The notes beneath the pieces were generated by a model. That model was not told the origin of the DNA. It saw only the letters and a list, made by a program, of their open reading frames with translations, and ran no database searches. A program made the position numbers and the translations under genes. Below, one piece after another: positions 1,563 to 61,777 of a DNA stretch of 64,000 nucleotides. How positions within the stretch are numbered: position 1 is the stretch's first letter; every line of letters starts with the position of its first letter. Where the stretch lies: positions 124,001-188,000 of IMG/VR virus record IMGVR_UViG_3300046660_000716, one strand, 5' to 3'.

Positions 1563-1772
1563 TCAATCATCTGTTGTCCCGGATGGTGGATCTGCCTTCG
1601 GGCGGGGCGCGCCGGAGAACACGGCCTTCCCCTCCAGGACCTTCAGGGTGACCGCCAGGATTGCGTATTGCTGCGAGAAGCTCTCGGCGTCGGCCCCGGT
1701 CCGCTGGAGGCGCGCGATGTTGTCGTCGCACTTGGACAGCCAGTCCACGATCCTTGCGTTGATTGCTTTCAT
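1563..1772 (-). CDS. Hypothetical protein
   Basis: MKAINARIVD..., start overlaps the upstream stop (ATGA). Confidence 0.5.
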   Translation of the reverse strand: MKAINARIVDWLSKCDDNIARLQRTGADAESFSQQYAILAVTLKVLEGKAVFSGAPRPKADPPSGTTDD

Positions 1773-1984
1773 GGCGCGCTCCCTGCGTGGATGAGGGACC
1801 CGACGCGGCTGTAACACTGCTTGAGGAAGTCCATGTTCGCCCGGAAGACGTCGACTGTCTCCTCGTCGGAAAAGTCAGCTTTAGTGGACGCGTTTTTCAG
1901 AGCGGCGATGCAGGACCGGATGTGGGCGAGCCCGTCCTCGACCGTGGCGATCGAGGCGATGTCGAAATTCGGGAGAGGCGTCAT
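1769..1984 (-). CDS. Hypothetical protein
   Basis: MTPLPNFDIA... with a GAGG RBS. Confidence 0.55.
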   Translation of the reverse strand: MTPLPNFDIASIATVEDGLAHIRSCIAALKNASTKADFSDEETVDVFRANMDFLKQCYSRVGSLIHAGSAP

Positions 1985-2011
1985 GGCGTTGTCCTCGGTG
2001 GAGGCATATGA

Positions 2012-2042
2012 GAGGGAGGGTGGACCGAAGCCCACCCTCCCT
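2012..2042. terminator. GC-rich hairpin, probable terminator of the long fibre gene
   Basis: gggagggtgg-loop-ccaccctccc inverted repeat just after the stop at 2063. Confidence 0.5.
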
Positions 2043-2062
2043 ATCTACGACTCAGGCGCGGC

Positions 2063-3745
2063 TTACAGGCCCGGCAGCTTGCTTGCGAAGCCCTTGACCA
2101 GTGCGGCTTCGGTCAGGGTCACGGTCAGCGTGTCGATGTCGGTCTCTTCGACCGACACGATGTCGTTGTAGTACTTGCCGTTGTCGCCCTGGACCATGAA
2201 GCTGAAGTTCAGCGGGGTCGAGTGCAGGCCGTGGGCGAACACGTGCACCAGCTGGGCCGAACCGGCCTGGAAGGTGGCCGAGCTCGCGTTGATGGCGTCC
2301 GTCACGACCGCGATGGCGGCGTTGCGGGCGGTCACCTCGGCGGCGTCGGCGGCCGCGCGGGCGGCTGCTTCGGCGGTCACGGATGCGGCGATCACACCTT
2401 CAGCTGCCAGCGCGCGGGTGTTCTCGGCGGTGACGCTTGCGGCGACCACGCCCTCGGCTGCGGTGGCGCGGGTCACTTCGGCCGCGATCGCGTTCGAGTT
2501 CACCAGCTCTGCGGCCTGGGCGCGGGTGGCCTCGGCATCCACGCTCGCCTGCACGGCGGCCTCGGCCGCAGTTGCGCGGTCGATTTCGTCCTGCAGGGCG
2601 GTGCCAACGGTGCCGCCGGCGGCGTCGATGTTGGCCTGCAGCGCGGCTTCCGCTGCCTGGGCGCGGGTGGCCTCGGCTGCGATCGCGTTGGCGTTCAGCT
2701 GCTCGGCAGCGGTCGCGCGGGTGACTTCGTTGGACACGCTGGTGCCCAGCGCGATCTCGGCGGCTTGCGCACGCGAGGTCTCGGCGGTGATGGCACCAGC
2801 GTTGACGCCTTCAGCAGCGGTCGCACGGGCGATCTCTGCCGTCAGGTTCCCGGCGACGGTCGAGACTGCACCCTGGCGGGCGGTCACTTCCGCGTCGACG
2901 GCCTGCTGCACAGCCGACTCAGCGGCGGTAGCGCGGGTGGTCTCGGCAGCGATCGCGGTCGACAGCACGCCTTCCGCGGTGGTCGCGCGGGTGGCTTCGG
3001 CAGCCACGGCGGCGCCGCGTGCGGTCACTTCCGATGCCAGGCCGGCGTTGATCTCGTTGACGGCCGAGACCAGGTCGGTCTTGACGGTGGTGGTCAGATC
3101 GTCAACGTTACCGATCTTGCCACCGGCCTGCTGCTCGACGTCGCTCAGGCGCTGGTCCAGAGCTGCTTCGGCACCGGTCGCGCGGGTGATCTCCGAGGCC
3201 AGGCCGTCCGAGACGGTGGTGATCGAGGCGTTCAGCGCGTCGGTGGCCGCGGTCAGCGCGTTGGCAGCGCCGGTCACGGCGGCGGCGACGGCTGCCTCGT
3301 TCGCGTGCAGGCCCGTTTCCAGGGCGCCCAGGGTGTTGAACGCGGTGTCAACGTCGCCGCGCAGCTCTTCCTTGGCGGCGGTGATGTTGGTGCCGATCAG
3401 TGCGGTGATCGTGTTGTACAGGTTCGGGTCGTTGTTCAGCGCGGCAGAGATCTCCTGCAGCGTGTCCAGCAGCTCGGGCGTCGTGCCCTTCAGCGCGGTG
3501 ATGGCCGCGTCGGTGTAGGCGTTGGCCGAGGCCAGGGCCGCGGTCAGCTCCGCGCTGGACGAGAAGGTCGCCTTGACGACGGCGCCGGTGTTGTCCAGGG
3601 TCGTGAAGTTGAACTGCTTGGTGGTGGTGTTCAGCCACAGGCGGCCCGCGGTCAGCGGGGCCGGGTCAGCGGTGAGGCGTTCGACGTTCAGGTTCTCGAT
3701 GACGCTGCCGGCGGCCATCTTGATGCCATGTGCTTTGATAGACAT
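2063..3745 (-). CDS. Long coiled-coil fibre/whisker-like virion protein
   Basis: 560 aa with many 18-residue AExTRAxAAE repeats, an LDTLQEISAALNND fibre motif and a C-terminal HGL..beta module. Confidence 0.7.
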   Translation of the reverse strand: MSIKAHGIKMAAGSVIENLNVERLTADPAPLTAGRLWLNTTTKQFNFTTLDNTGAVVKATFSSSAELTAALASANAYTDAAITALKGTTPELLDTLQEISAALNNDPNLYNTITALIGTNITAAKEELRGDVDTAFNTLGALETGLHANEAAVAAAVTGAANALTAATDALNASITTVSDGLASEITRATGAEAALDQRLSDVEQQAGGKIGNVDDLTTTVKTDLVSAVNEINAGLASEVTARGAAVAAEATRATTAEGVLSTAIAAETTRATAAESAVQQAVDAEVTARQGAVSTVAGNLTAEIARATAAEGVNAGAITAETSRAQAAEIALGTSVSNEVTRATAAEQLNANAIAAEATRAQAAEAALQANIDAAGGTVGTALQDEIDRATAAEAAVQASVDAEATRAQAAELVNSNAIAAEVTRATAAEGVVAASVTAENTRALAAEGVIAASVTAEAAARAAADAAEVTARNAAIAVVTDAINASSATFQAGSAQLVHVFAHGLHSTPLNFSFMVQGDNGKYYNDIVSVEETDIDTLTVTLTEAALVKGFASKLPGL

Positions 3746-3820
3746 GAGTGTTTCCTTCGAAGGGTTGTGATGCTGGGGTCAACAGCTGCATCTATGCGGC
3801 TGTTAAAGAGGAGGTCGTTC

Positions 3821-4312
3821 TCAGACCGTGTCGAACGTCAGCGAGCATACTCCAGCAACGGGCTCGGTGAAGTCTATTTGGATGCGGTTGGCGTCCAGGG
3901 GGCGCCAGCCCGCGAGGTTCTGCTGCCCATCGCTGTCGATGATCATGATGGCGATGGGCACGCGCCCGCGGTTGTGCGAGATGACGGGGTTCTGGTTCAG
4001 CTGGAACGGGAACTGCTTCGTCACCGTCGCGTCGGTCGGGGCGAAGTAGAGCGTCCAGTTCGAGAGCTGCGTGGCCGGGAGCGCGGACAGCTTGTACCCG
4101 GCCGAGATGTCCGCGCGGCGGCAGAAATCGCCCACCCGCGCGGCCAGCGCCAGCATGTGGTTGACGTCGCTCGCTTCGAAGAAGCGCGGCATCGCGTCCA
4201 CCTGGGTCTTGTCGGCCTTCAGGCCGATGAGGCTGCGGAGCTCCAGGACGCGGGCTCCGACGAAGTTCCCGATGCGGGTCAGCGTCAGGGTGTTGGTGAT
4301 AGGGTCACTCAT
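3821..4312 (-). CDS. Virion/fibre-associated protein
   Basis: 163 aa; VISHNRGRVP...DANRIQIDFTEPVAG module shared with neighbours. Confidence 0.6.
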   Translation of the reverse strand: MSDPITNTLTLTRIGNFVGARVLELRSLIGLKADKTQVDAMPRFFEASDVNHMLALAARVGDFCRRADISAGYKLSALPATQLSNWTLYFAPTDATVTKQFPFQLNQNPVISHNRGRVPIAIMIIDSDGQQNLAGWRPLDANRIQIDFTEPVAGVCSLTFDTV

Positions 4313-4893: not shown

Positions 4894-4954
4894 AAAGTTA
4901 TCTTTCTGACGGAGGTCATGTATATGACCTTGTTGCACCCCGGCGCGCGGTGAG

Positions 4955-6007: not shown

Positions 6008-6067
6008 GTGGCTTTCTCCGTTGGGGTCGGACCGCGACTGGCGCGGCCCTTCCTCTCAGATTACTGT

Positions 6068-7924
6068 TTACTTGTCGACGACGATGTCGATCATCACACG
6101 CTCGATCAGGCCGTTGAATACGACTTCGGCTTTGATACGGACGATGCGCTGCTGACGGTCGTAGGCGCTGGCGTACACGGTGCCGCTCGCCGAGTCCAGG
6201 GCGCGGTTGCTCACCCAGGTCTGCAGGTAGCTGTTGACCGAGTACTGCAGCGAGTCCCAGGTCTGGCCGTCGTTGAACTCGAACTCGTAGGTCTCACCGA
6301 TGTTCTCGAGCTCGCGGCGGATGCGCAGCAGGGTGCGGACGTGGCTGATGTCGCTCAGCGCCGAGTTGACGAACTGGCTCGTCGACTGGCTGTTGAACTT
6401 GGTCTGGCGCACGTCGCGCTCGACGTAGTTCAGCTTGGCCTTGTACAGCTCTTCGCGGTACACGTCGTTCGGAGCCCAGGACATCGACTTGAAGCCGGCC
6501 ACGGCGCCGCGGCGCGGGCCGACGAACGGCCAGTGGATGCCGAAGGCCGCGTCGTTCGACGGGATCTTCTCGGCCAGGAAGTAGGTCGGCGTGACCTGGA
6601 TGTCGTTGCCCTGGAACTCGTCTTCCACAACGAAGTCCTGCACGAAGATCGCGCTGTAGAACGAGTTGATGGACAGCTGGTTCTGGCGGATCTTGATGGC
6701 CTGGCCCGGCGAGCCGGTGAAGCCGACGTCCAGGATCGACATGAAGTCGCCGCGCGCGGAAGCGAAGTTCGACATCGCCACCTTGACCGACATCGGGTAG
6801 TTGGCGTCCAGCATCATGTCGAACGGGTACGCCTTCTTGTCCCACGCGTCCGAGAACAGCGTGTCGTAGATGTTGGCGCCGCTCGACGGATCGATGAAGT
6901 CGCCCGAGCCCGAGTACGCCTTGTACAGCAGCGCCTCCAGGCTGTTCGGGCCTACCCAGTCACCGTCCGAGCCGCCGCCCATCGGGCGGAAGACCTCGGG
7001 GGTCGGGGTCAGGTCGGCCGAGCCGCTGGCGACGGTCACGCCCGCGTGGATGGTTTCCGGCACGGACACGCTGCGCTCTTGCAGGGTGAACATGTCGATT
7101 TTCTTCGCCACGGTCGCATCGTCGTTGATGTACTCGGTGATCGCGTCGTAGCCGTCCTCGCTGAACAGGCCGCGGCCGTAGTTCGAAAAGTTCTTCAGCA
7201 CGTCGACGAAGAACTGGCTGGCGCCCGAGTTGTTGGTGGCTTCAGGGTAGAACGACACCAGGAAGGTCTCGCGCTGGTCCGACGCCGAGGCGTAGAACGC
7301 CATGTCGTAGACGCGGTGCGCGTAGGTCTCGTCCAGGCGATCGTTCAGATCGATGGACAGGCCGAATGCGTTGTACTTCACGCCGCGGTCCTTGCCGCGG
7401 ATCACGGCCAGGGGGTGGTACATGAAGCCGTCGGCTTCGGGGTCGTCCGGCTGCGCCAGGACCAGGCCCTGCAGCGACGCGTCGGTGCGGATGGCCTTCT
7501 CGGTGGCCGCCGGCAGCGCGCCGCGGCCATCGCCCAGGGTGCGGGTGCGGACCTTGACTTGCTTGCCGTTGGCGGTGTCGACCTTGCAGCCGACTTCGAG
7601 GATGTACGCAGCGTAGGTCGACTGCTGCAGCGGTGCATCGTTCGCATCCTTCTCGATGTACGGCAGCACGCGCAGGCACAGCGCGGCACCGCCGGCGCGG
7701 AGCCAGCGCACCACGTTGTACGCGGTCTGGCCGTACTTGCGCATGTTGGGTGCACCGTAGTAGAAGAGGAACTCGCTGTCGGTGGTGACCAGTTGGATGC
7801 GATTGTCCGGACCAGATTCAGCCGGGAAAGCAGCGTAAAGCAGAGTCAGACCGACTGCCGTCACGAAGACCTGACTGTTGTCAATGATCCGCGAGGTTAC
7901 AGAAGGGTGGAGGTATTCAGCCAT
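6068..7924 (-). CDS. Tail sheath protein
   Basis: Starts MAEYLHPSVTSRIIDNS; GGAALCLRV, GGSDG, LDANYP, WPFVGPRRG, ALSDISHVR, YEFEFND sheath motifs. Start revised from the ORF track's 8152. Confidence 0.9.
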   Translation of the reverse strand: MAEYLHPSVTSRIIDNSQVFVTAVGLTLLYAAFPAESGPDNRIQLVTTDSEFLFYYGAPNMRKYGQTAYNVVRWLRAGGAALCLRVLPYIEKDANDAPLQQSTYAAYILEVGCKVDTANGKQVKVRTRTLGDGRGALPAATEKAIRTDASLQGLVLAQPDDPEADGFMYHPLAVIRGKDRGVKYNAFGLSIDLNDRLDETYAHRVYDMAFYASASDQRETFLVSFYPEATNNSGASQFFVDVLKNFSNYGRGLFSEDGYDAITEYINDDATVAKKIDMFTLQERSVSVPETIHAGVTVASGSADLTPTPEVFRPMGGGSDGDWVGPNSLEALLYKAYSGSGDFIDPSSGANIYDTLFSDAWDKKAYPFDMMLDANYPMSVKVAMSNFASARGDFMSILDVGFTGSPGQAIKIRQNQLSINSFYSAIFVQDFVVEDEFQGNDIQVTPTYFLAEKIPSNDAAFGIHWPFVGPRRGAVAGFKSMSWAPNDVYREELYKAKLNYVERDVRQTKFNSQSTSQFVNSALSDISHVRTLLRIRRELENIGETYEFEFNDGQTWDSLQYSVNSYLQTWVSNRALDSASGTVYASAYDRQQRIVRIKAEVVFNGLIERVMIDIVVDK

Positions 7925-8103
7925 TAGGCTCTCCTTGGAAAAGGGGATAGTCAGACGATCTCGGCTCTGTGCCGGATTCAATGACCTGTTGGACCGCCCC
8001 CTCTGGACGGGAGCCAGGTTTTCATGGGATCCTGACCGCGGCGGCCCCCATCCGCGGCCCCATATCATGCCTCCGAGACCACAACCACCACCGGAGGAAC
8101 ACC

Positions 8104-11260: not shown

Positions 11261-11488
11261 TTGGGTTTCTCTGGTGGTGATGGGTTAGGGACTATCGTGA
11301 CTGTTCCCGCAGCGAGCAGGACTGCCACGATGACCTGTTGGGAGCCACCGTGGTGAAAAAACGTTGATCGCTCAGGGGAGGGGAACCCCTTTAGGGGGTT
11401 CCACCCCACCGCGCCGACAGCATATAATTTCTCTGACCACTCGGTCGAATCCCACCAACCACACAGAGTATCAGAAGGAGAGTACCAG

Positions 11489-13968: not shown

Positions 13969-14013
13969 ACCGATATCATACAACCGCATCCACAACCAAC
14001 AAAGGAGATCCAC

Positions 14014-19264: not shown

Positions 19265-19459
19265 CACGCATCGGAAAGTTAATTTCCGTAACGCCCTCCA
19301 ATGTTGACTCCTTAATATTCTCATGAGAAGAACCGCACGACGGTGCGGGCGCCTCTTCTTCTCCGCCCCGGCGTTTGCACACCGGAACCAGGCGGAGAAC
19401 CAACAACAGCCTGCCGATCCTGATCCGATCGGAATGCAACTGGCAGTGAGAAGGAGATC

Positions 19460-22415: not shown

Positions 22416-22493
22416 GGCTGGCCCTTTCTGTTGGATGTCTATCACAAGTGGATGTTTCGCCCCATCCGGCGGCGGCCGGATGGGGTTGTAGGA

Positions 22494-23215: not shown

Positions 23216-23317
23216 AAAAAGAGTCGCTTCCCCCGAGAGGGAAGCGACCAAAGTCTTGGCAGGGATGGGCCAGGATCAGCAGAAAGGAAAACACAGCGGG
23301 AAACCGTACACGCCTTC
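23216..23317 (-). ncRNA. Candidate late small RNA
   Basis: AACA-N6-TG at 23328-23317 and an intrinsic terminator at 23248-23216, with no convincing ORF between. Confidence 0.4.
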
Positions 23318-23368
23318 ATGGGTATGTTGACCGGCGGACTCATCCAGAGAGTGACTTCGGACGCGGTG

Positions 23369-25126: not shown

Positions 25127-25762
25127 CTAGTTTGTTGGTCCGGAGTCGGGTTTCCGGAAGTCATCGTCACCATCAATTACGTGTTTGATGATTTCGGCCA
25201 CAGCGGACACTCTTTCTCGCACGGTGACGTACACGTCGCGGACGCGTTCGTAGCCGAGGTCGGCGAACCGGGCGCGCAGCGTGGTGCACTGCTCGTTCGC
25301 CTCGTCGATCAGAGCCTTGGAGCGCGTGATGTACTTCTGGCCGACTGGGTCCTTGATGCGGTCCAGCAGCTGCTCCGACGCCGTGCTGAGCGCCTGGCAC
25401 TGGGCCTGGATCTCAACGAGGCTGTCGTACATGCGCTCGCGCTTGATCTTCTCGGACGCGGGGTCCGGGGCGGAGGCCGGAGCCCCGTCGGCGGAGCCGT
25501 CTCCGGGATCGTCACTGCCCAGCTCGGATGTGTCGCTGTTGTCGTCGTCATCGATGTTGAAGTCCGACGATCCGTCGTCGGCAGGAGGGTCCGCCGGGTC
25601 CGCGTCCGGCTTGGCTGCGGGTTTGGCCTTCGGATCTTTGGGCGCGTCGGGCTTGGCCGCTGGATCCACGGCAGCCTTGCCGCCCGGCTCCTTCAGCTCC
25701 TTCTCGTCCTTCGGGGGGTCGCCCGGCGCCTCGTTCAGGGGCACGTAGCCGGTCAGGATCAT
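25127..25762 (-). CDS. Head assembly/scaffold-like protein
   Basis: Acidic, Pro-rich N-half and helical C-half, directly upstream of the MCP. Confidence 0.55.
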   Translation of the reverse strand: MILTGYVPLNEAPGDPPKDEKELKEPGGKAAVDPAAKPDAPKDPKAKPAAKPDADPADPPADDGSSDFNIDDDDNSDTSELGSDDPGDGSADGAPASAPDPASEKIKRERMYDSLVEIQAQCQALSTASEQLLDRIKDPVGQKYITRSKALIDEANEQCTTLRARFADLGYERVRDVYVTVRERVSAVAEIIKHVIDGDDDFRKPDSGPTN

Positions 25763-26106: not shown

Positions 26107-26207
26107 TTGGTAAATCCTCGTGGTCGCGGCGATGGCGCCGCAGGGTGGAGTCTATCCCCTTGTTGATCCGGAACGAGGGGCGGACATCGAGAAACCGAAA
26201 TTTTGCA

Positions 26208-26235
26208 TTGAAAAAACATGCAACTGCTATATAAT
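26208..26235 (+). promoter_or_regulatory. Composite promoter for the RNAP beta-N gene
   Basis: TTGAAA-16-TATAAT, containing AACA-tgcaac-TG and TATATAAT. Confidence 0.6.
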
Positions 26236-26297: not shown

Positions 26298-27779
26298 ATG
26301 TCATCTGTATCCGAAAAACTCTATGCACGCTTTCAGAGCGCGAACCCGGAGAACACCTTCAATGACGACTTGATTTTCTGGCGCGAGAAGGACGATCCCG
26401 AGGGCTACCTCGAGGACGTGTTCCAGGCGCTCGAAGTCGTCCCAGGGATCAAGTTCAACGGCGTGACGGTCATGCGCGACGAGAGCCGCTACCCGAAGGA
26501 CCTGATGTTCAACGACATCGAGCCGTCGCGCCTGGACCTGGCACAGGTGCGCTTCCACCTGGAGATGCAGGAGAACGTCAAAGACATCACCCTGTCCATC
26601 TTCCTGCCGAAGCTGAAGGACCGCATGTTCTACGAGCTGAACGGCAGCCCGTACTACCCGATCCTCCAGCTGGTCGACCGCGGTACCTACGTGACCCGCA
26701 AGACCTTCACGCTGAAGACGCTGCTGATGCCGCTGGTGTTCCGCCGCGACTCGGTAGTCAAGGTGCAGGACACGGTCAGCGAGAAGGAGTACGAGGAGCT
26801 GATCTACACGCTCGACCTCTTCCGCAACCGCATCAACATCTTCCGCTACCTCTTTGCCAGCAAGGGCATGGCCGGCACGATGGAGTTCCTCGGCATCAAC
26901 ACCGAGACCGAGGTCATGCTGTGCGTCAAGGACGAGGTGAAGAACACTGAGCCCGGCACGTACCGCATCTACGACGTCAAGGGCGCCGCCGGCCTGTGCG
27001 TCGTCGCGGAGGAGTCGTGGGTCGCGCAGAACCCGCACTACCGCGGAGCCATCATGGTGACGCTGGCCGACGCCCTGGACGGCATCCAGCGCCGCCTGAT
27101 CGAGGAGGACGACATCGCGCAGTGGAAGCGCCGCCTCGGCCGCCACTTCACGCAGAACTCCAACGGCTACGAGGAAAAGGCGGACAAGATCCTCATCAGC
27201 CTGCAGCGCATCCTGGACCAGCGCACCAAGAAGAACCTGGCGCACGTCGCGCCAGAGGACAAGGTGGACGTGTACTGTATCCTCCGCTGGATGATGCGCG
27301 AGTATAAGACGCTGGTGCAGGTCGACGGCATGGACGTGCGCAACAAGCGCATCCGCGTGTCCGAGTACCTGATCCACCCGCTGCTGCTGAAGTTCTCCGA
27401 GTCCACGTACCGCCTGCTGAACTCGAAGAACCTAACCTTCCGCTCCCTGGTCGGCGTGTTCCGTCCGTTCATCCACGACGTCGACGACCCGAAGTCGAAG
27501 CCACAGACGAACTTCCTCATCAAGAAGCTGGTGATGAACGAGCTTTTGAGATATAACAATATGGTCAACTCGTTCGACCTGATCCCTGCGCTCCGGTGGA
27601 CGACGCGCGGGCCGCAGTCCCTGAGCGACCGGAGCCGATCGGACATCTCGTTGCGGTTCAGGGGCCACCACCCATCGTACGTTGGGCGTATCGGGTTGAG
27701 CGCAGCAAGCGCATCCGATCCTGGCACGAGTGGCACGTTGGTGCCGTTTTGCAAGACCGATTCGCAGTTCTTTCTGTAA
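26298..27779 (+). CDS. RNA polymerase beta subunit, N-terminal part (probably non-virion RNAP)
   Basis: LNGSPYYPILQLVD, NKRIRVSEY, GPQSL, RGHHPSYVGRI...SDPGTSG (RpoB fork/Rif region); early-type promoter. Confidence 0.85.
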   Translation: MSSVSEKLYARFQSANPENTFNDDLIFWREKDDPEGYLEDVFQALEVVPGIKFNGVTVMRDESRYPKDLMFNDIEPSRLDLAQVRFHLEMQENVKDITLSIFLPKLKDRMFYELNGSPYYPILQLVDRGTYVTRKTFTLKTLLMPLVFRRDSVVKVQDTVSEKEYEELIYTLDLFRNRINIFRYLFASKGMAGTMEFLGINTETEVMLCVKDEVKNTEPGTYRIYDVKGAAGLCVVAEESWVAQNPHYRGAIMVTLADALDGIQRRLIEEDDIAQWKRRLGRHFTQNSNGYEEKADKILISLQRILDQRTKKNLAHVAPEDKVDVYCILRWMMREYKTLVQVDGMDVRNKRIRVSEYLIHPLLLKFSESTYRLLNSKNLTFRSLVGVFRPFIHDVDDPKSKPQTNFLIKKLVMNELLRYNNMVNSFDLIPALRWTTRGPQSLSDRSRSDISLRFRGHHPSYVGRIGLSAASASDPGTSGTLVPFCKTDSQFFL

Positions 27780-35744: not shown

Positions 35745-35975
35745 GGGTTTGCTCCGGTTTTCTTCGAAGAGGAAGGGAAAGCGGGGCGCCGTCGCGGCCC
35801 GCAAGGTGATCAATGATCTATGTTTCAGTTCGGCACCAAACAGACGCGAGGTTTCGGCTTTCGCTCCCCATCTGGGTATCGGGCCGAACGGCGCTCTGGC
35901 ACCGCGAGCGCAAATGCGGTGCAACAGCAATTCATCGGGATCGCTCCGATCTCAGCATCAAAGAAGGGAAAGCAG

Positions 35976-39066: not shown

Positions 39067-39747
39067 ATGAATAACGCCAAGCTCATAGCAGTAGACACCG
39101 ACGACGTGTTGGTCCACATCACCACCCCGTGGATCCTGCGCGCCGCCGCGCATCCGGACCTCCGCCAGTTGCTGGAGGCCGTGATCGGCAAGCACTACCC
39201 GAACGACGGCGACCTGACGCGCGCCCTGCTGGCGCGCCCGCACCCCTACATCCAGGACTGGCTGACCGCGGCGCACGCGCTCTCGCCTAGCCTGTACCCG
39301 GCGCTGGACATGGTGTACCGCGGCGACCCCGCCTTCTACGACGACCTGCCGCCGACCCAGTACTGCCAGGCCATCCGGGCCGCGATGTCGATGCCGGGCC
39401 GCGTGGCCCACGTGCACGTCATCACGCACAACTTCGACAACGCCGACCCGTGCGCCGAGAGCAAGGAGCGCTGGCTGCGCAGGTGGCTGGGGGAGCGCGA
39501 CCGCGTGACCATCCACCACGTCCAGGCCGGCCAGAAGAAGTCCGACGTGATCGCCGAGCACTGCCCCGAGGCGGACTCGTTCGCGGACGACTCAATGAAG
39601 AACGTCGTCGACATCCTGCTGCACGACGGCTGCAAGCCCCGCGAGATCCTGATCCCGCGCATGGGACACAACGTCATGAGCGAGCAGATCGCGACCCTGG
39701 CGGTGCTGCGCAAGATCAGCATCGTCTACTACGAAAACGCACTCTAG
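39067..39747 (+). CDS. HAD-family 5'(3')-deoxyribonucleotidase-like protein
   Basis: IAVDTDDVL, FYDDLPP, K.RWL, KSDVI, FADDS. Confidence 0.75.
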   Translation: MNNAKLIAVDTDDVLVHITTPWILRAAAHPDLRQLLEAVIGKHYPNDGDLTRALLARPHPYIQDWLTAAHALSPSLYPALDMVYRGDPAFYDDLPPTQYCQAIRAAMSMPGRVAHVHVITHNFDNADPCAESKERWLRRWLGERDRVTIHHVQAGQKKSDVIAEHCPEADSFADDSMKNVVDILLHDGCKPREILIPRMGHNVMSEQIATLAVLRKISIVYYENAL

Positions 39748-41832: not shown

Positions 41833-42060
41833 TTAGGGGCGACCGCCGCCGCTGCGGGCCACATCGTTGGCGGCGGTCTCCTCTATGTGCCCCCGCAAGG
41901 GCGCATCTCCTTCATCACAGCCGCACGACGGGACGGCAATGTGGCAAACCCGCGGGTGTTCTGACCTTTCTTTCGCCCGAGATGGCCGCCATGGATCGCA
42001 AGGTCCATGGCGGTCCCCTAACCGCAACATTTTTTTGATCAACATCTTGGGATTTTTACC

Positions 42061-46529: not shown

Positions 46530-46644
46530 TCCGTTCGGAAAATGCCCGACTGCCCACCGGCAGTCGGGACCCCTCCGTCAACAGAACTTTGGTGCTTTCG
46601 CTGATGCGCGAACTCACCAATGAACCCTTTAGATTGGAGATGCC

Positions 46645-47883
46645 ATGGGCCAGGTAGTTTCTAGCGCCGAGATGAGGCGCGTCGTCGATGCGAACCTGCA
46701 CAGCTACATCGAGCAGGCGACGCAGACGTACTCCCGCCTCTTCGGCAAGACCCCGACTTTCGTGACGTACTACTCCCAGGACACGTCGCAGAGCTACGCG
46801 GACGTCAACCTGGGGGGCGCCATCCAGCTGGTCGGGCAGGAGAGCCCGCTCCGCTTCCAGAAGATCAACGACTTCCCCCTGTACGGGATGAGCGACGCGG
46901 ACGTCAGCTCCTCCTACGACGAGCTGCAGGGCATCGTCAGCGCCGGCGTCCACGGCGAGACCTACGCGCTCCCCGGCACGATCGAGCCGATGGAGAACGA
47001 CCGCTTCGTCATCGACTACCTCGAGACCAAACTGGTCTTCCGCGCGATCAGCTGCAACCCCGATCGCCTCGAGGGCAAGTCCTACTTCAAGATCGAGTGG
47101 GCGTTGGACCCGGTCGAGATCGGCACCATCGAGCGGCAGGTCGTCGAGTCCTTCGACTTCGAGCTGTCCACCATCGGCACGGGCGACAACCCGCTGATCG
47201 AGTCCGACCTGGCGATCCTGCTGCGCGAGATGGAGGTGCTGGTGGAGTTCCACCGCGCCTCCTACTGGAAGGCGTTCTACGACCGCAGCTCCGGCGCCCT
47301 GCTGTGCCGGACCGGCTTCGACAGACCGCTGCACGATCGCGGCGTGGACCTCATCGTGGCCAACAAGTCCCTGCTGGGGTCCAACGGCTACATGAAGGGC
47401 CGCACGGTCGTCCCTGTGGACTACTCCGACCGCGGCTCCTACGACGACATGGTGTACCCGCTGACCCTCTACTGGCAGGCCGAGCGCGGCAAGTGGGACC
47501 CGGCGGTGCAGACCCTGAACAGCGTCATGCTGGCGCCTTCCTCGCCGATCCGCCAGTCCAACCCGTTCTTCGCCGAGTTCGCGGTGGACGGCTACATCGA
47601 GGCCCTCACGGCCCCGAGCGCATCCTACCAGATCGGCGGTCCGGACTTCGTCGCCAAGACGACGGCGAAGGACTACGCCGATGATGTACCAATTCGTGCC
47701 CTGGCACGTCGATGCCTGCAGGAAGATGGAATGGGCACCGACACCCGCGTTGCATTGCGCGCGTTCAACCTAGCGCTGAACGATTCTTCCCTGGTCCTCA
47801 ACCGAGCAGACCAGTACTGGCTCATGCCGATCGTGCTGATGCGTGCAAAACGCTTCCGCGATCAGGCACGGGCGAACAACTGA
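46645..47883 (+). CDS. Putative virion structural protein (neck/tail)
   Basis: TPTFVTYY, SPLRFQKINDFPLYG, LPGTIEPMENDRF; GGAG RBS; AACA-N6-TG promoter. Confidence 0.65.
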   Translation: MGQVVSSAEMRRVVDANLHSYIEQATQTYSRLFGKTPTFVTYYSQDTSQSYADVNLGGAIQLVGQESPLRFQKINDFPLYGMSDADVSSSYDELQGIVSAGVHGETYALPGTIEPMENDRFVIDYLETKLVFRAISCNPDRLEGKSYFKIEWALDPVEIGTIERQVVESFDFELSTIGTGDNPLIESDLAILLREMEVLVEFHRASYWKAFYDRSSGALLCRTGFDRPLHDRGVDLIVANKSLLGSNGYMKGRTVVPVDYSDRGSYDDMVYPLTLYWQAERGKWDPAVQTLNSVMLAPSSPIRQSNPFFAEFAVDGYIEALTAPSASYQIGGPDFVAKTTAKDYADDVPIRALARRCLQEDGMGTDTRVALRAFNLALNDSSLVLNRADQYWLMPIVLMRAKRFRDQARANN

Positions 47884-47951
47884 TTGACGCGCTGCGCCCC
47901 TGGGCATCCAGGGCGCACACCCACCCATCACACAACTTAGGAGATCACGCC

Positions 47952-52567: not shown

Positions 52568-54436
52568 CTACCCACCAAAGAGGCTATCGATCACCCCGGG
52601 CTGCGTCTTGCGAAGGATGTCCGTGGAGGTCAGCTGCGCCTTGACGCGCTCGAACGCCAGCGAGTTGGTGACGCTCGGGCTGGACAGGATGGCCGGGGTC
52701 AGCTTCAGGACGGCGTACGGCGGCTCGTCCGGGCCGGTCGAGAAGTCCGGGCGGTTCATGTGGTCGGTGGCGCTGCGCACCTGGGCGCGCAGGATCATCT
52801 CGGCGTGGACCGACGGGGTGCGCAGCTCGGATTTGGTGAGCAGCGCCATCAGGCGGGCGTACGCGTCGTGGTACGTGGCGATCTCCTCGCGCTCGATCAG
52901 GTTGAAGATCGAGTGCAGGGCCTCGGACAGGTCCGTGTTGCTGATCGGGACCTGGAAGACCGAGCTGTCCTGCAGCGGGGACAGGGTGAGCTCGCCGTCG
53001 TCGACCTCGGTGTTCTCCCACGCCTCGTCGTCGAGGTAGATGGGCACCGGGGTCGTAATCTTGATCCGGCTCTGCTTGCCGGCGATCTTGTAGTAGAAGA
53101 TCGTGGTGGAGCGGCGGTCCTCGTCCTCGTCGAGCTCGATGTCGTCCTGCTTGACGTACACGCGGAAGACGGTGCTCTCGGCGATGACCGAGGTGCGCTC
53201 GACGGAGAAGTGCTTGAGGAAGTCCTCCGGCCAGTTGATCTTGGTCGGGCGAGCCTTCAGCAGGTGCTTGGAGGACAGCAGGCGCTGCAGGATCTGCTCG
53301 GAGATGATCAGCACACCGTAGATGCCGGCGTGGATGCTCGCGTTGCTGCGGGCCAGGGCGCCGTAGCAGTGGTGGCAGACGCCGTTCTTGCCCGCGCAGG
53401 TGATCGGCGAGCGCAGGGCGATGTCCTGTTCGACCAGGCCCTCCAGCTCGCCTTCCTCGGCGAGGTGCCACTGCTGGTTGGCGTGGGTGGCGATGTAGCG
53501 ACCCTCCAGGCGAGCCGCGTGGTCCAGGCTCAGGACCTTGGTCTGCACGCCGTGCAGCGTCTCGCAGTCCTCCAGGTCCGGGTCGATGAAGTGGTTGGCG
53601 ACCAGCAGGACCAGCTTGCGCGACAGGTAGCCCGAAGTCTTCACCTGCTTGTAGTTGGTGGTCAGCGCCTTGCGGGCGCCGATCGCGCAGATGTAGAAGT
53701 CTTCGACGCCGCGCATGCCGCGCAGGAAGCTGGTGTCGATCGGCTCCGGCATCAGCTGGCCGTCCATCAGGCCCGGCTTCACGCCGATGCTCACGAACGC
53801 CTGGCGCATCTGGCCGATGTTGACGGCCGAGCCCGAGCGCAGGAGGCGACCCAGCTCGCCGGGCAGCGCCTTCAGGCGCGTGTTCAGCTCTTCGGTGGCC
53901 GCGTCGGCGGCCTTCTCGATGTCGCCCAGCTCGCCCACGGGGGCCTGCCAGCGCAGCAGCTTGCGGATCTCGGGGTCGCGCTCGCCGGCCTCGAAGAGGC
54001 CCTTGATGCTGATGCTCGTGCCTACGCGCCCGACCACGGCGATCGCCAGGTCCTGCACGTAGTTCACGGCGGCGGCGACGGCCATGTTCAGGGTGTCCGG
54101 GTCCAGCACGCGGTACAGCGCCTTGATGGTGACGTCCAGGTGGACTTCCAGGTACTTCGCGTTGATGATCTCACGCACAAAGCGGTCGGCCGGCGGCTGG
54201 ACCTGGGCGACGTGGTACGGGTAGAGCAGCGACAGGCTCGCTAGCGCGCGCCCGACCGACATTTCCTCCGGCCCGTTGCCGCACTCGACGAGGATGGTGC
54301 CGTGGCGGCCGCCGTCCTCTCCCAGCGAGAGCTCGTGCAGCTGCTGCATGACGTCCTCGTAGCTCCCGCCTTCCTGGTCTGCCAGCGCGGCGACGAGGTC
54401 CACGACCTGAATGTCGGCTTCCATCATTTGATCCAT
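52568..54436 (-). CDS. RNA polymerase beta' C-terminal subunit (probably non-virion RNAP)
   Basis: SGSAVNIGQMRQ, PIDTSFLRG, GARKAL...KTSGYLSRKL, DC, RSPITC...GVCHHCYG, QRLLSSKH. Confidence 0.9.
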   Translation of the reverse strand: MDQMMEADIQVVDLVAALADQEGGSYEDVMQQLHELSLGEDGGRHGTILVECGNGPEEMSVGRALASLSLLYPYHVAQVQPPADRFVREIINAKYLEVHLDVTIKALYRVLDPDTLNMAVAAAVNYVQDLAIAVVGRVGTSISIKGLFEAGERDPEIRKLLRWQAPVGELGDIEKAADAATEELNTRLKALPGELGRLLRSGSAVNIGQMRQAFVSIGVKPGLMDGQLMPEPIDTSFLRGMRGVEDFYICAIGARKALTTNYKQVKTSGYLSRKLVLLVANHFIDPDLEDCETLHGVQTKVLSLDHAARLEGRYIATHANQQWHLAEEGELEGLVEQDIALRSPITCAGKNGVCHHCYGALARSNASIHAGIYGVLIISEQILQRLLSSKHLLKARPTKINWPEDFLKHFSVERTSVIAESTVFRVYVKQDDIELDEDEDRRSTTIFYYKIAGKQSRIKITTPVPIYLDDEAWENTEVDDGELTLSPLQDSSVFQVPISNTDLSEALHSIFNLIEREEIATYHDAYARLMALLTKSELRTPSVHAEMILRAQVRSATDHMNRPDFSTGPDEPPYAVLKLTPAILSSPSVTNSLAFERVKAQLTSTDILRKTQPGVIDSLFGG

Positions 54437-54471: not shown

Positions 54472-54489
54472 ATTATACACTTTTTTGTT
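54472..54489 (-). promoter_or_regulatory. Composite promoter for the beta'-C gene
   Basis: AACA-aaaaag-TG followed immediately by TATAAT on the minus strand. Confidence 0.55.
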
Positions 54490-54572
54490 GCAAACGTGTT
54501 CAATTTTTCACCCAAAGCTAGTGCGATGCGAAAACAATACCCCTACCCGTTCCCGGGTAGGGGGCGTTGCTG

Positions 54573-59882: not shown

Positions 59883-60000
59883 CCACTGACCGATGCGGGG
59901 GCGCAACGCCCCCGTCCCGGTTGCCCTCTTTTTTTCCCTCCCCTCAAAAATTTCGGGCATAATTGCGCCGAAGTTACTACACACCAGAAAGGAGGGCACC

Positions 60001-60213
60001 ATGTGCATCAAAATCACCCCGCTGTACCACCGCTGCATCAGCTCCGGCCCGGACGCCGGCAGCTTCTACGTGATCCCGTTCCGCACCTCGGCGTACGCCG
60101 TCGAGCGCGCGCAGGAAGAGCAGGACCGCCTGCGCGCCGCGGGACACCGCGTGGTGCCCGCCCCGACCACCGCCCTCCCCGAGGCCCGCCCGGTCCTGCG
60201 GCGCGTGGCGTAA
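60001..60213 (+). CDS. Hypothetical protein
   Basis: AGGAGG RBS, MCIKITP... Confidence 0.6.
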   Translation: MCIKITPLYHRCISSGPDAGSFYVIPFRTSAYAVERAQEEQDRLRAAGHRVVPAPTTALPEARPVLRRVA

Positions 60214-60268
60214 GAAAGACCCAACGGCTCAGGCCGTTGGGTCTTCCGTAGTCAATTCCCCATCACAC

Positions 60269-60970
60269 CTAAGCGATCCACAGCCTGCGGGCCGTGGACG
60301 ACTTCAGCTGCTTGCTCTCCATCCGCTCGATGATCTCCGGCCGCTTGTCCGCCTGGGCGTTCAGCCGCTCCAGGTTCAGGTTCAGCTCGCCGAAGATCGT
60401 CTGCACGGTCTGGAAGTACTGCCGGACGCTCAAGATGTCGATGGCGATGTCCGCCAGCATCAGCTCCCTGAAGATCTCCCTGGCCCCCGGGTGGATGGTG
60501 CGGAAGTGCGTCGCGTGCACGCACTTGCACTCCACGTAGAGGTCGGAATATTGGAGGCCCTTTGGGAAAATTTCGATGATGTTGGGAGGGCGGTAGTCGA
60601 ACGTCAGGGAGAGCTCGGAAGCCGACTGGCGGTCGGCCACCAGCTGGCGGTCCAGGACGTCGCCGAACATGAGAGGATCATATGGGAAGGCGCCGAAAGC
60701 CCCAACCCCTTCACGCACACGATTCACGCCGAGAATTCGTTCGCCTTGCGGGCGGATCTGGTAGACGCCCTCGCGCTGGTCGATGCGGTCGGCCACTGTG
60801 TCAATTTTGAGATCGACCATGTACGGCAAGTAGATCGAGAACGTCGGTAGGGTCTCGGCGTCAATGCAGGCGAGTATGTCGGCGTCGTTGAAGTCGATCG
60901 GACCTGTAACCGTCTGCCCTAAGAAGGACCTACAGCGGTTCGTAACCCACGTCGCGTCGATTATGGACAT
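60269..60970 (-). CDS. Putative neck/head-completion protein
   Basis: ETLPTFSIYLPY, LTFDYRPPN, FRELMLADI, GELNLNLE pattern typical of T4 gp13-like neck proteins. Confidence 0.55.
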   Translation of the reverse strand: MSIIDATWVTNRCRSFLGQTVTGPIDFNDADILACIDAETLPTFSIYLPYMVDLKIDTVADRIDQREGVYQIRPQGERILGVNRVREGVGAFGAFPYDPLMFGDVLDRQLVADRQSASELSLTFDYRPPNIIEIFPKGLQYSDLYVECKCVHATHFRTIHPGAREIFRELMLADIAIDILSVRQYFQTVQTIFGELNLNLERLNAQADKRPEIIERMESKQLKSSTARRLWIA

Positions 60971-61722
60971 TGGAATTCCTTAAAAAGGTGGTGATAGGCC
61001 GGAATATCGTTGAGACAGATCCTTCGCACTGTCACCTTATGTGGTTTGCCATTCAACAGCACAGCAATTTCGGTATACGTCTTCTTGTCAACGAAATGCA
61101 GCGTGTAGACTCTCTTTACTAGCTCGTCATCAAGAAGACGAGAGGTAGGTATCCTGGATTGCGTTTCCTGGAAGTCGCGCGGCTCATATCCTAGCGGTAC
61201 ATGCGACCAGAATTTACCCTTGTACACATCTACGACATACGATGGACTCAGGTTGAGCCTCACGGCAGCGCTGGCGGGCGTTTCGCCGTTGTGTAACGCC
61301 GTTCGGAGAGCAATTACTTCCTCGCGCGTAAGCTTTGCCCGTGGGTGGTCCTCGTCCCGTGCCAAGCGGTGTGCAAGCCGATCCGCCATGTTCTGAACCT
61401 TGGTGCCCCAGTACAAATTACTGCACACGGGGTTTGACCTAACGCCATCCTTATGGCACGCCTCCAAGATTGCGTCCGACTCTGGAAGAGGGATGAACGT
61501 GCGCGCAACCATGTTGTGCACTATAAACATGGCATCACCGCCTAATTTCAGTCGTAGACTGATATGCACATATCCAGTTGTACTAGACACATGCGTTTTC
61601 ATTTGCCTTGGCGTCGAACTACGCAGCGTGGAAAACACTTCTCCACGCCGATTGATGAAATAGCCGTCTACCAGACGATCATCGACAATTGGAAATAGTT
61701 CTGCGGTATCTTCTTCGGTCAT
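60961..61722 (-). mobile_element. Free-standing HNH homing endonuclease (low GC)
   Basis: YFINRRGEVFS, VHNMVARTFIP, ACHKDGVRSNPVCSNLYWGT; GC clearly lower than the flanks. Confidence 0.85.
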
Positions 61723-61724
61723 AC

Positions 61725-61777
61725 AATATCCTCCCCTGTGTGAATGATACCCTGTTTGTCAAACAGGAGAGGATATT
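61725..61777 (-). promoter_or_regulatory. RBS-sequestering hairpin with an internal late promoter
   Basis: 15-bp stem AAUAUCCUCUCCUGU/ACAGGGGAGGAUAUU covers GGAGG; AACA-gggtat-CA lies in the loop. Confidence 0.7.

What the first reader, a model, noticed from the sequence alone, without database searches (positions are those of the whole stretch)
1564..61756. AR9-type late promoter code (AACA-N6-YR) in a high-GC jumbo phage
Seen: AACA, exactly 6 nt, then TG/TA (sometimes CA/CG) occurs on the coding strand about 25-80 nt upstream of nearly every structural or late unit (fibres, sheath, mini-sheath gene, terminase, HU/capsid operon, protease, vRNAP beta', 46645, 47952, HNH), about 17 sites. Known: this is the late consensus of the Bacillus phage AR9 non-virion RNAP, which needs template-strand deoxyuracil opposite the AA, whereas phiKZ late promoters use TATG. 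Inference: a GC-rich phage, probably of a Proteobacterial host, uses the same code. It either reads it with thymine through a divergent sigma-like subunit or has U-containing/modified DNA. Either would be a new variant of this transcription system.
Basis: partly seen in the sequence, partly recalled or inferred. Interest (0 to 1): 0.8.

Follow-up and report, generated by a model that had tools for sequence, protein, structure and literature searches.

The report
AR9-type late promoters in GC-rich phage
An uncultured 65%-GC giant phage carries, in front of its structural genes, the same short promoter signal (AACA, six bases, then TA or TG) that Bacillus phage AR9's own RNA polymerase reads; it turns out to be a distant AR9 relative and, like AR9, probably has uracil instead of thymine in its DNA.

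Summary
AACA-N6-T[AG] is enriched in sense orientation upstream of genes (11 sites vs 2.4 expected, 0/1000 shuffles). Only spacing 6 stands out. 15 of the window's 31 sites lie 15-180 nt upstream of a same-strand start codon (p~1e-7). About 46 kb of the same genome outside the window shows the same signal (10 vs 1.3).

The motif equals the published AR9 late consensus, A(-11)ACA-N6-U(A/G)(+1). The phage is not a phiKZ-type outlier. Its major head protein and sigma-like subunit match only the AR9/PBS1, S6, LPJP1 and phiR1-37 group, and gene order is syntenic with AR9. Its own gp226 homologue, elsewhere on the 259-kb contig, keeps the uracil-discriminating 2.1bis helix (V206, I207, W208, Y210). 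The genome also encodes a homologue of the validated PBS1 dTMP phosphatase and a dCTP deaminase.

The same spacing-6 signal appears in phiR1-37, S6 and metagenomic relatives of 25-62% GC, so the code is clade-wide.

Verdict: a new GC-rich member of a known system. TSSs and DNA chemistry remain untested.

The parts
1564..1575 (-). Candidate late promoter AACAGATGATTG, 53 nt upstream of gene 914-1510; it lies in the 3' end of the upstream ORF
3793..3804 (-). Candidate late promoter AACAGCCGCATA, 47 nt upstream of the tail-fibre-like gene 2063-3745
4923..4934 (-). Candidate late promoter AACAAGGTCATA, 29 nt upstream of 4309-4893, directly after a strong hairpin (dG -46)
6057..6068 (-). Candidate late promoter AACAGTAATCTG overlapping the sheath stop codon; 49 nt upstream of 5756-6007 and the AR9 g127-like virion gene 5002-5736
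7979..7990 (-). Candidate late promoter AACAGGTCATTG, 54 nt upstream of the tail sheath gene 6068-7924 (AR9 g126 homologue; AR9 g126 has the motif too)
11328..11339 (-). Near-consensus site AACAGGTCATCG (C at -1), 68 nt upstream of the operon 11260->8396, which includes the AR9 g125-like virion protein; almost identical to the sheath site
19402..19413 (+). Candidate late promoter AACAACAGCCTG, 46 nt upstream of the small ORF 19460-19696
22445..22456 (-). Candidate late promoter AACATCCACTTG, 62 nt upstream of the large terminase gene 20313-22382, after a hairpin (dG -40); AR9 g121 has the motif too
23317..23328 (-). Candidate late promoter AACATACCCATG, 172 nt upstream of 22494-23144, after the MCP terminator
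25174..25185 (-). Internal candidate AACACGTAATTG, 137 nt upstream of the major head protein gene 23420-25036
   Evidence: AR9 also has internal late promoters
26153..26164 (-). Candidate late promoter AACAAGGGGATA, 46 nt upstream of the HU gene 25759-26106 and the HU / 25127-25762 / MCP operon; AR9 HU g103 has the motif too
26215..26235 (+). Tandem late motif AACATGCAACTG plus early-type box ATATAAT upstream of nvRNAP beta-N 26298-27779
   Evidence: tandem early+late promoters are described for AR9 nvRNAP genes
42026..42037 (+). Candidate late promoter AACATTTTTTTG, 23 nt upstream of virion-RNAP beta'-N gene 42061-43587 (AR9 g145 homologue, which has the motif too)
46580..46591 (+). Candidate late promoter AACAGAACTTTG, 53 nt upstream of 46645-47883 (AR9 g165-like virion protein, which has the motif too)
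47875..47886 (+). Candidate late promoter AACAACTGATTG overlapping the stop codon of 46645-47883; 65 nt upstream of 47952-48374
54472..54489 (-). Tandem late motif AACAAAAAAGTG plus early-type box GTATAAT upstream of nvRNAP beta'-C 52568-54427
35923..35934 (+). Near-consensus site AACAGCAATTCA (C at -1), 41 nt upstream of the DNA polymerase gene 35976-37967; weak candidate
61745..61756 (-). Near-consensus site AACAGGGTATCA (C at -1), 22 nt upstream of the low-GC HNH-like ORF 60961-61722; weak candidate
26298..27779 (+). nvRNAP beta-N subunit (AR9 gp105 homologue, 36% identical); keeps R363 (here R372), the residue that stacks on the -10 uracil
52568..54427 (-). nvRNAP beta'-C subunit (AR9 gp154 homologue)
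39067..39747 (+). Homologue of AR9 g151, which is Dtm_PBS1, the validated dTMP phosphatase of the dU-DNA pathway. HAD motifs DxDxV, KKSD and DD are kept; it is syntenic with the DNA polymerase gene
8062..8068 (+). Early-type box ATATCAT, 35 nt upstream of 8104-8346. It is one of 8 non-coding, sense-oriented ATAT[ACT]AT boxes; the others are 11422+, 11791+, 13973+, 26229+, 38012+, 57409- and 57523+

Best explanation
The AACA-N6-T(A/G) elements are late promoters read by the phage's own five-subunit non-virion RNA polymerase, as in Bacillus phage AR9. By analogy with AR9, the sigma-like subunit and the beta-N subunit bind the template-strand complement 3'-UUGU-5' at -11 to -8, and transcription starts at the final purine. 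That subunit is a gp226 homologue encoded at about 234.9-236.4 kb of the same contig. The window holds 15 exact and about 3 near-consensus sites in front of tail-fibre, sheath, tube-like, terminase, HU/capsid, virion-protein and virion-RNAP genes. A second class, ATAT(A/T/C)AT, resembles the AR9 early (virion-RNAP) promoter core and precedes the nvRNAP, SbcC and other non-structural genes. The phage is a GC-rich, uncultured member of the AR9/phiR1-37 lineage, and its DNA most likely contains deoxyuridine in place of thymidine.

Shown here: motif enrichment, spacing, orientation and position; homology and synteny; conserved pocket residues; presence of Dtm and Dcd genes.

Inferred: that these sites are transcription start sites, that nvRNAP reads them, and that the DNA contains dU.
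For: 1. Statistics in the window: 11 sense vs 3 antisense vs 2.37+-1.5 shuffled; only spacing 6 is enriched; 15/31 sites in promoter position, p=1.4e-7.
2. Out-of-sample test on ~46 kb of the same genome: 10 sense vs 2 antisense vs 1.33 for other spacings, p=1.5e-6. The hits include the tail-tube and Dcd genes.
3. The motif is identical to the experimentally defined AR9 consensus. AR9 itself shows the same signature under my test: 82 vs 33 antisense, other spacings 17-43.
4. Orthologous late genes carry the motif in both phages: sheath, g127-like, TerL, HU, g165-like, vRNAP beta'.
5. The signal is clade-wide. GC-rich/intermediate relatives: 16 vs 1.8, p=1e-10. AT-rich relatives: 46 vs 17.6. 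phiR1-37: 13 vs 1 antisense vs 3.7. S6: 7 vs 2.25.
6. The phage's own gp226 homologue, P0186, is on the same contig. It matches PDB 7S01_A at E=1.4e-38 and keeps YSDKVIWNY, i.e. V206, I207, W208 and Y210. Position 206 varies in 37% of 194 family members.
7. gp105 R363 is conserved.
8. dU pathway: a Dtm homologue, and a dCTP deaminase scoring 103.8 on TIGR02274 against a cutoff of 92.8, located near primase/gp226 where AR9 has its own Dcd.
9. No thymidylate synthase or stand-alone dUTPase Pfam hit appears in the ~54% of the contig screened.
10. The MCP tree groups the phage with phiR1-37, inside the span of verified dU phages.
11. The early box precedes gp226 here and in relative L012, as in AR9.
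Against:
- De novo, the motif ranks only 20th of 19,601 dyads.
- Some late units lack an exact site. The protease site is inside the ORF, the g153-like gene has AACA-N8-TG, the 1984->1563 unit has none, and the vRNAP beta gene has C at -1.
- Two exact sites precede nvRNAP genes, which are early or continuously expressed in AR9.
- gp105 K375 aligns to S383 beside a gap. gp226 F261 and Y263 are A and F here, although in AR9 those contacts are through the main chain.
- The Dcd is of the E. coli-type trimeric family, some of whose members are bifunctional and feed dTTP synthesis.
- No Ugi homologue was seen.
- About 46% of the genome was not screened.
- The contig assembled from ordinary metagenome libraries, whereas dU-DNA can be hard to sequence with uracil-intolerant polymerases.
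Confidence: 0.78

Rival explanations
1. The promoter code is the same, but the genome contains ordinary thymine (or a different modified pyrimidine), and this lineage's nvRNAP tolerates the C5 substituent. On this reading, uracil dependence is not universal among gp226-type polymerases.
For: DNA chemistry is untested. The contig assembled from standard metagenome and SRA libraries, while dU phages are reported to resist standard library preparation. gp105 K375 is not clearly conserved. The Dcd belongs to a family that in cells feeds dTTP synthesis. Position 206 is variable in the wider family, so specificity can evolve.
Against: V206, the residue whose side chain excludes the thymine methyl, is retained, and so are I207, W208, Y210 and gp105 R363. 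A homologue of the validated dTMP phosphatase is present with intact catalytic motifs. All cultured relatives are known or presumed dU phages. No thymidylate synthase was found in the 54% of the genome screened.
Confidence: 0.12
2. The motif is the binding site of another phage factor, such as a late activator or repressor, or an RNA-level signal. It would then not be the element contacted directly by nvRNAP.
For: No biochemical data exist for this phage. The motif is short, and its distances to start codons vary (23-172 nt).
Against: The sequence, spacing and orientation are identical to a consensus for which direct nvRNAP-DNA contacts are solved structurally. The contacting residues are conserved in this phage's subunits. 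The same genes carry the motif in AR9, where TSSs were mapped.
Confidence: 0.05
3. The signal is a compositional artefact: AT-richer intergenic DNA simply contains more AACA...TR by chance.
For: Intergenic DNA is 57% GC against 65% overall. AACA alone is somewhat enriched in sense upstream regions: 49 vs 34.8. The de novo rank is modest.
Against: Dinucleotide shuffles of the same regions never reach the observed count. Only spacing 6 is enriched and antisense is not. The signal replicates out of sample and in 13 other genomes spanning 25-62% GC.
Confidence: 0.02

Closest known systems
Late promoters of Bacillus phage AR9/PBS1 read by the gp226-containing non-virion RNAP (Lavysh 2017, PMC5312081; Sokolova 2017, PMC5449584; Fraser 2022, PMC9209446)
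   Same: The consensus AACA-N6-T(A/G) is identical, as are its orientation and its position upstream of orthologous virion, packaging and vRNAP genes. Tandem early+late arrangement occurs at nvRNAP genes. The gp226, gp105 and gp154 subunits are homologous, and V206, I207, W208, Y210 and R363 are conserved. A Dtm homologue is present and gene order is syntenic.
   Different: The genome is 65% GC against about 28%. The N6 spacer is unconstrained in composition instead of A/T-rich. +1 is mostly G (12/15) instead of A. -12 is often C. The 5' UTRs are longer (median about 50 nt vs about 28 nt). gp226 is only ~26% identical. The dCTP deaminase is of the metal-independent E. coli type, not the zinc dCMP-deaminase type. 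The RNAP genes are not interrupted by introns. The host is unknown.
Yersinia phage phiR1-37 (dU-DNA jumbo phage)
   Same: It belongs to the same clade. Its MCP is sister to this phage's in my tree. It encodes a gp226 homologue. My scan finds the same spacing-6 motif upstream of its structural genes.
   Different: It is AT-rich (33% GC). It removes thymidine nucleotides with a dTTP pyrophosphatase instead of a Dtm. The published transcriptome reported no late consensus.
phiKZ non-virion RNAP late promoters (TATG at the TSS; gp68 subunit)
   Same: It is a split beta/beta' multisubunit phage RNAP with a fifth, sigma-like specificity subunit, and transcription is independent of the host RNAP.
   Different: The promoter element is different (TATG, with no -10-like AACA). 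The DNA contains thymine and the phage builds a phage nucleus. PhiKZ-type phages did not appear among the MCP or gp226 matches.
Bacterial sigma70 -10 element recognition
   Same: It is a short element centred about 10 nt upstream of the TSS, recognised by a sigma2-like domain with bases inserted into pockets.
   Different: In AR9-type enzymes the template strand is read, not the non-template strand, and the pockets select uracil over thymine.

Membership tests
AR9-type nvRNAP late promoter | Non-template consensus AACA-N6-T(A/G), with exact 6-nt spacing | tested here: met
   Only spacing 6 is enriched; 11 sense vs 2.4 expected; T is the only enriched base at -1
AR9-type nvRNAP late promoter | Located upstream of late (virion, packaging, vRNAP) genes in sense orientation | tested here: met
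   15/31 sites are in promoter position. The downstream genes are homologues of AR9 virion or late genes. Exceptions are listed in the Against line
AR9-type nvRNAP late promoter | Transcription starts at the terminal purine | not testable with these tools
AR9-type nvRNAP late promoter | Genome encodes a gp226-type sigma-like specificity subunit | tested here: met
   P0186 lies on the same contig at about 234,921-236,438. E=4.7e-41 to AR9 g226 and 1.4e-38 to PDB 7S01_A; flanked by GroEL and primase as in AR9
AR9-type nvRNAP late promoter | Split nvRNAP core (beta-N, beta-C, beta'-N, beta'-C) | tested here: inconclusive
   beta-N (26298-27779) and beta'-C (52568-54427) were found. The beta-C and beta'-N homologues lie outside the sequence examined
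AR9-type nvRNAP late promoter | Uracil-discriminating pocket: gp226 V206, I207 and Y210; gp105 R363 and K375 | tested here: met
   V, I, W and Y are retained. R363 is retained; K375 is ambiguous beside a gap. V206 is not invariant family-wide: 122/194
AR9-type nvRNAP late promoter | Activity requires template-strand dU at -11 and -10 | not testable with these tools
   This needs in vitro transcription on dU and dT templates
dU-DNA jumbo phages (AR9/PBS1, S6, phiR1-37 group) | Thymidine replaced by deoxyuridine in virion DNA | not testable with these tools
   Sequence records read U as T; this needs LC-MS or enzymatic assays
dU-DNA jumbo phages (AR9/PBS1, S6, phiR1-37 group) | Enzyme that removes thymidine nucleotides (Dtm or Dtt) | tested here: met
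   Window 39067-39747 is homologous to AR9 g151 (E=2e-19) and keeps the HAD motifs. g151 is Dtm_PBS1: its termini match the published primers. Activity itself is untested
dU-DNA jumbo phages (AR9/PBS1, S6, phiR1-37 group) | dCTP deaminase supplying dUTP | tested here: met
   L009:14262-14897 scores 103.8 bits on TIGR02274 against a cutoff of 92.8. It belongs to a different enzyme family from the Zn-type Dcds of PBS1 and phiR1-37. Mono- versus bifunctionality is unknown
dU-DNA jumbo phages (AR9/PBS1, S6, phiR1-37 group) | Uracil-DNA glycosylase inhibitor (Ugi) | tested here: not met
   tblastn of window and L009 proteins against AR9 gave no hit to g104. Ugi is small and fast-evolving, and 46% of the genome is unscreened, so this is weak evidence
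dU-DNA jumbo phages (AR9/PBS1, S6, phiR1-37 group) | Phylogenetic placement within the group | tested here: met
   MCP and gp226 match only this group among 50,697 phage records. In the MCP tree the phage is sister to phiR1-37 with 90/90 support, on long branches
phiKZ-type late promoters (TATG) | TATG at the TSS, no upstream element, gp68-type subunit | tested here: not met
   The enriched element is AACA-N6-TR, and the specificity subunit is gp226-type

The most novel reading that the evidence does not exclude
This GC-rich lineage uses the AACA-N6-TR code on thymine-containing or otherwise modified DNA. That would mean uracil dependence of gp226-type polymerases is not universal, despite the retained V206. 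A more likely but less radical novelty is that this is the first GC-rich dU-DNA jumbo-phage lineage, one that replaced the clade's zinc-type Dcd with an E. coli-type dCTP deaminase at the same genomic position.
Probability: 0.12. Interest if true: 0.7.

Novelty: new member of a known kind. Interest (0 to 1): 0.4.

Why it matters
Until now the AR9 late promoter code had been defined experimentally in one AT-rich Bacillus phage. [quoted passage not shown]

In a 65%-GC genome the A/T-rich signal stands out from the background. A simple test of spacing and orientation recovers it here, in phiR1-37, in S6 and in metagenomic relatives spanning 25-66% GC.

This has three consequences:
- The code, and probably uracil-dependent promoter recognition, is ancestral to a much larger group than was known. 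The gp226 family has 513 representatives in metagenomes.
- It gives a natural mutational scan of which promoter positions matter. The spacer is free; -12 C, -2 W and +1 G are preferred.
- It flags a GC-rich, probably dU-DNA phage lineage with a non-orthologous dCTP deaminase.

It does not reveal a new mechanism.

Tried and rejected
1. Protein 31726-32826 as the window's sigma-like subunit. A weak BLAST hit to the gp226 finger (E=0.018) was not supported: there was no PDB hit and hhalign probability was 0.2%. The protein has no homologue among 5.8 billion proteins.
No RNA or DNA reads could be laid on the window, so TSSs and library-type effects are untested.
I reran it with only the proteins returned by the homology search.
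4. Single-protein search for related loci found only the phage itself. Profile queries found only distant relatives, with MCP 32-42% identical. Close-range phylogenetic footprinting was therefore impossible, and I used per-genome spacing scans instead.
6. Walking the contig covered about 54% of the 259 kb. No thymidylate synthase or dUTPase was seen, but their absence from the whole genome is not shown.
7. De novo dyad enumeration does not single out the motif; it ranks 20th.
8. The CA/CG variants are not enriched as a class.
9. The protease site 33663 is rejected as a clear promoter because it lies inside the ORF.
10. Megablast against phages found nothing. There are no tRNAs and no Rfam families in the window.

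Full report
WHAT THE WINDOW IS. The window is 65% GC and corresponds to positions about 124,001-188,000 of a 259,338-bp metagenomic contig, JGI 3300046660 Ga0495625_0000026, also assembled in SRR26076590. I called genes from codon and GC3 bias, and the calls agree with JGI's. PHROG and Pfam searches and tblastn against AR9 identify these genes:
- tail-fibre-like gene (2063-3745)
- sheath (6068-7924)
- AR9 g127-like and g125-like virion proteins
- large terminase (20313-22382)
- major head protein (23420-25036)
- HU (25759-26106)
- prohead protease (32868-33686)
- DNA polymerase (35976-37967)
- virion-RNAP beta'-N (42061-43587) and beta (61780 to beyond the window end; 1327 aa)
- non-virion-RNAP beta-N (26298-27779) and beta'-C (52568-54427)
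- SbcC (54573-57353)
- helicase (50463-52043)

There is no nucleotide-level match to any of 50,697 phage records. At protein level, the head protein and the sigma-like subunit both match exactly the same 21 records: AR9/PBS1-like Bacillus phages, BpSp, Staphylococcus S6/MarsHill-like phages, Listeria LPJP1 and Yersinia phiR1-37. The literature describes these phages as having, or being presumed to have, deoxyuridine in place of thymidine. Gene order is largely collinear with AR9.

CHECK OF THE OBSERVATION. The pattern as written (AACA-N6-YR) is only modestly enriched window-wide: 81 vs 58+-7. Part of that excess is codon periodicity. The refined pattern AACA-N6-T[AG] behaves like a real signal.
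- In 63 gene-oriented upstream regions it occurs 11 times in sense and 3 times in antisense. Dinucleotide shuffles give 2.37+-1.52, and none of 1000 reaches 11.
- Among spacings 0-12, only 6 stands out.
- Ignoring coding status, 15 of the 31 sites in the window lie 15-180 nt upstream of a same-strand start codon. Random placement predicts 10.6% (p=1.4e-7), and other spacings give 20% (Fisher p=9e-4).
- T is the only base enriched at -1, although it is the rarest base in these regions.
A sub-form with WT before the C is only suggestive. It comprises 11328, 35923 and 61745, plus a site 20 nt upstream of the vRNAP beta gene just outside the window.
- The protease site lies inside the ORF.
- An unbiased enumeration of 19,601 dyads ranks the motif 20th (p~1e-4). 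It falls behind ribosome-binding-site, terminator-stem and ATATnAT patterns. So it is convincing as a test of a pre-specified consensus, but not as a purely de novo discovery.
- Several sites lie directly downstream of strong hairpins, giving a terminator-promoter-RBS layout.

REPLICATION. These include sites 20 nt upstream of the tail-tube gene and 26 nt upstream of the dCTP deaminase gene. AR9 serves as the positive control and shows the same signature: 82 sense vs 33 antisense, other spacings 17-43. Three GC-rich or intermediate metagenomic relatives pooled give 16 vs 1.8 (p=1e-10), and eight AT-rich relatives give 46 vs 17.6 (p=1e-8). phiR1-37 gives 13 sense vs 1 antisense vs 3.7, in front of its annotated structural genes including the MCP, sheath and HU-like gene. 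S6 gives 7 vs 2.25.

WHAT IT IS. The published AR9 late consensus is 5'-A(-11)ACA-N6-U(A/G)(+1) on the non-template strand. It was found at 94 of 118 mapped late TSSs; 17 more deviate in spacing or in one or two bases, and 13 are internal to ORFs. The AR9 nvRNAP holoenzyme reads the template-strand 3'-UUGU-5', and thymine at -11 or -10 abolishes recognition. In the structure, the -10 uracil sits between gp226 I207 and gp105 R363. The V206 side chain leaves no room for a C5 methyl, and V206G makes the enzyme accept thymine. Y210 stacks on the -9 G.

Orthologous late genes carry the motif in both phages: sheath, g127-like operon, terminase, HU, g165-like virion protein and vRNAP beta'.

A second upstream class, ATAT[ACT]AT, occurs 10 times in the window. 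Eight copies are non-coding, and all eight are in sense orientation 29-62 nt upstream of start codons of non-structural genes, including nvRNAP beta-N, SbcC and a MarR-like gene. A GTATAAT variant precedes nvRNAP beta'-C. This class resembles the core of AR9's annotated early promoters, AAATATATATTAT, and the MarsHill TATATTAT. It also precedes the gp226 gene here and in the closest relative, L012, as in AR9. The two nvRNAP genes in the window have tandem late and early elements, the arrangement described for AR9's continuously expressed nvRNAP genes. The AR9 two-polymerase scheme therefore appears to be conserved as a whole.

THE SIGMA-LIKE SUBUNIT AND THE U-VERSUS-T QUESTION. No gp226 homologue lies in the window, and a weak lead at 31726-32826 was rejected. 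A profile of gp226 relatives found 513 representatives in metagenomes. Searching with a GC-rich member identified P0186 (505 aa) on this very contig at about 234,921-236,438, flanked by GroEL and primase as in AR9. It matches the solved AR9 gp226 (7S01_A) at E=1.4e-38. In the 2.1bis helix it reads SRVLQTRYSDKVIWNYLRNV, against AR9's SRVFETKYSDVVIWTYLKNM. V206, I207, W208 and Y210 are all retained. This carries information, because position 206 is Val in only 122 of 194 family members and is Ile, Thr, Lys, Pro, Gly, Ala or Ser in others. gp105 R363 is retained in the window's beta-N; K375 is ambiguous next to a gap.

Two enzyme activities are reported to underlie dU-DNA synthesis: a dCTP deaminase, and a dTMP phosphatase or dTTP pyrophosphatase.
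- The termini of Dtm_PBS1 deduced from the paper's primers (MFSIKEP...TEEKAV) match AR9 g151 exactly. The window's 39067-39747 is its homologue (E=2e-19) with intact HAD motifs, and it lies next to the DNA polymerase gene as in AR9.
- A dCTP deaminase that passes NCBIfam's equivalog cutoff lies about 3 kb downstream of gp226. It belongs to the metal-independent E. coli-type family, not the zinc family used by PBS1, phiR1-37 and DSS3_VP1. It sits where AR9 has its own Dcd, near the primase.

Precomputed Pfam hits for about 54% of the contig show no thymidylate synthase and no stand-alone dUTPase. An MCP tree places the phage as sister to phiR1-37 (90/90 support, long branches), with AR9 and S6 on the other side, that is, within the span of verified dU phages. 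Together these results favour uracil-containing DNA. They do not prove it. Points on the other side: no Ugi homologue was seen, nearly half the genome is unscreened, the Dcd could be bifunctional, and the contig assembled from ordinary libraries.

COMPARISON AND VERDICT. Functionally and by descent this is the AR9 system: the same consensus, homologous polymerase subunits with conserved DNA-contacting residues, and the same early/late logic. The differences are those expected of a distant, GC-rich relative:
- the spacer composition is free
- +1 is G in 12 of 15 sites
- -12 is C in 9 of 15 sites
- -2 is A or T in 11 of 15 sites
- 5' UTRs are longer

The RNAP genes are uninterrupted where AR9's are split by introns, and the Dcd is non-orthologous. 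Novelty: a new member of a known kind. Two by-products are useful. The late code is clade-wide, including phiR1-37, for which none had been reported. And a GC-rich, probably dU-DNA lineage exists that is known only from metagenomes.

Noticed in passing
window 8062-8068+, 11422-11428+, 11791-11797+, 13973-13979+, 26229-26235+, 38012-38018+, 57409-57415-, 57523-57529+; variants 54472-54478-, 59957-59963+, 31685-31691+: A second upstream element, ATAT[ACT]AT. It occurs 10 times in the window, and 8 copies are non-coding, all in sense orientation 29-62 nt before start codons of non-structural genes. It ranked 2nd of 19,601 dyads. It resembles the AR9 early (virion-RNAP) promoter core and also precedes the gp226 gene in L009 and L012.
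   Followed up: partly
L025 (Yersinia phage phiR1-37, record 64946-106439): phiR1-37 shows the AR9-type late motif: 13 sense vs 1 antisense at spacing 6, with other spacings averaging 3.7. The sites lie upstream of its structural genes. The AR9 transcriptome paper states that no late consensus could be obtained for this phage.
   Followed up: partly
L009:14262-14897 (contig about 239,182-239,817): An E. coli-type, metal-independent dCTP deaminase (TIGR02274, above the cutoff) sits near primase and gp226, where AR9 has its zinc-type Dcd. This looks like a non-orthologous replacement. A late-type motif lies 26 nt upstream of it.
   Followed up: partly
gp226 family (P0002-P0199; alignment made): The sigma-like subunit family is far larger in metagenomes (513 representatives) than the dozen GenBank members. 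The thymine-excluding V206 is replaced in 37% of members by Ile, Thr, Lys, Pro, Gly, Ala or Ser, so some lineages may have different base specificity.
   Followed up: no
window 44809-46290 (+): A 493-aa protein with a RyR domain and a C-terminal Acb2/Tad1 hairpin domain, the fold of phage sponges for cyclic-nucleotide immune signals. It may be an anti-defence protein.
   Followed up: no
window 60961-61722 (-) and 43717-44812 (+): Free-standing endonuclease-type genes lie next to virion-RNAP genes. The other is a Zn-finger ORF plus an HNH_3/HTH gene just downstream of vRNAP beta'-N. The RNAP genes themselves are uninterrupted, whereas the AR9 orthologues are split by introns that carry such endonucleases.
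   Followed up: partly
window 19717-19735, 28520-28538, 48984-49004, 54542-54561: Terminator-like hairpins reuse the same stem, CCTACCC...GGGTAGG: 4 copies against 0 expected. Related stems occur at other gene ends.
   Followed up: partly
window 31726-32826 (+): A 366-aa ORFan preceded by an early-type box. It has no homologue among 5.8 billion proteins other than itself, and no PDB, PHROG or Pfam match.
   Followed up: partly
window 57574-59190 (+): A 538-aa protein with a MarR-type winged-helix domain (residues ~84-138), behind an early-type box and divergent from the SbcC gene. It is a candidate phage transcription regulator.
   Followed up: no
contig beyond L009 (Logan copy) and the gap 195-207 kb: The phage genome also carries TerC- and TerD-family genes and a 2535-aa protein with a glycoside hydrolase 19 domain, probably a tape-measure or tail lysin.
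   Followed up: no
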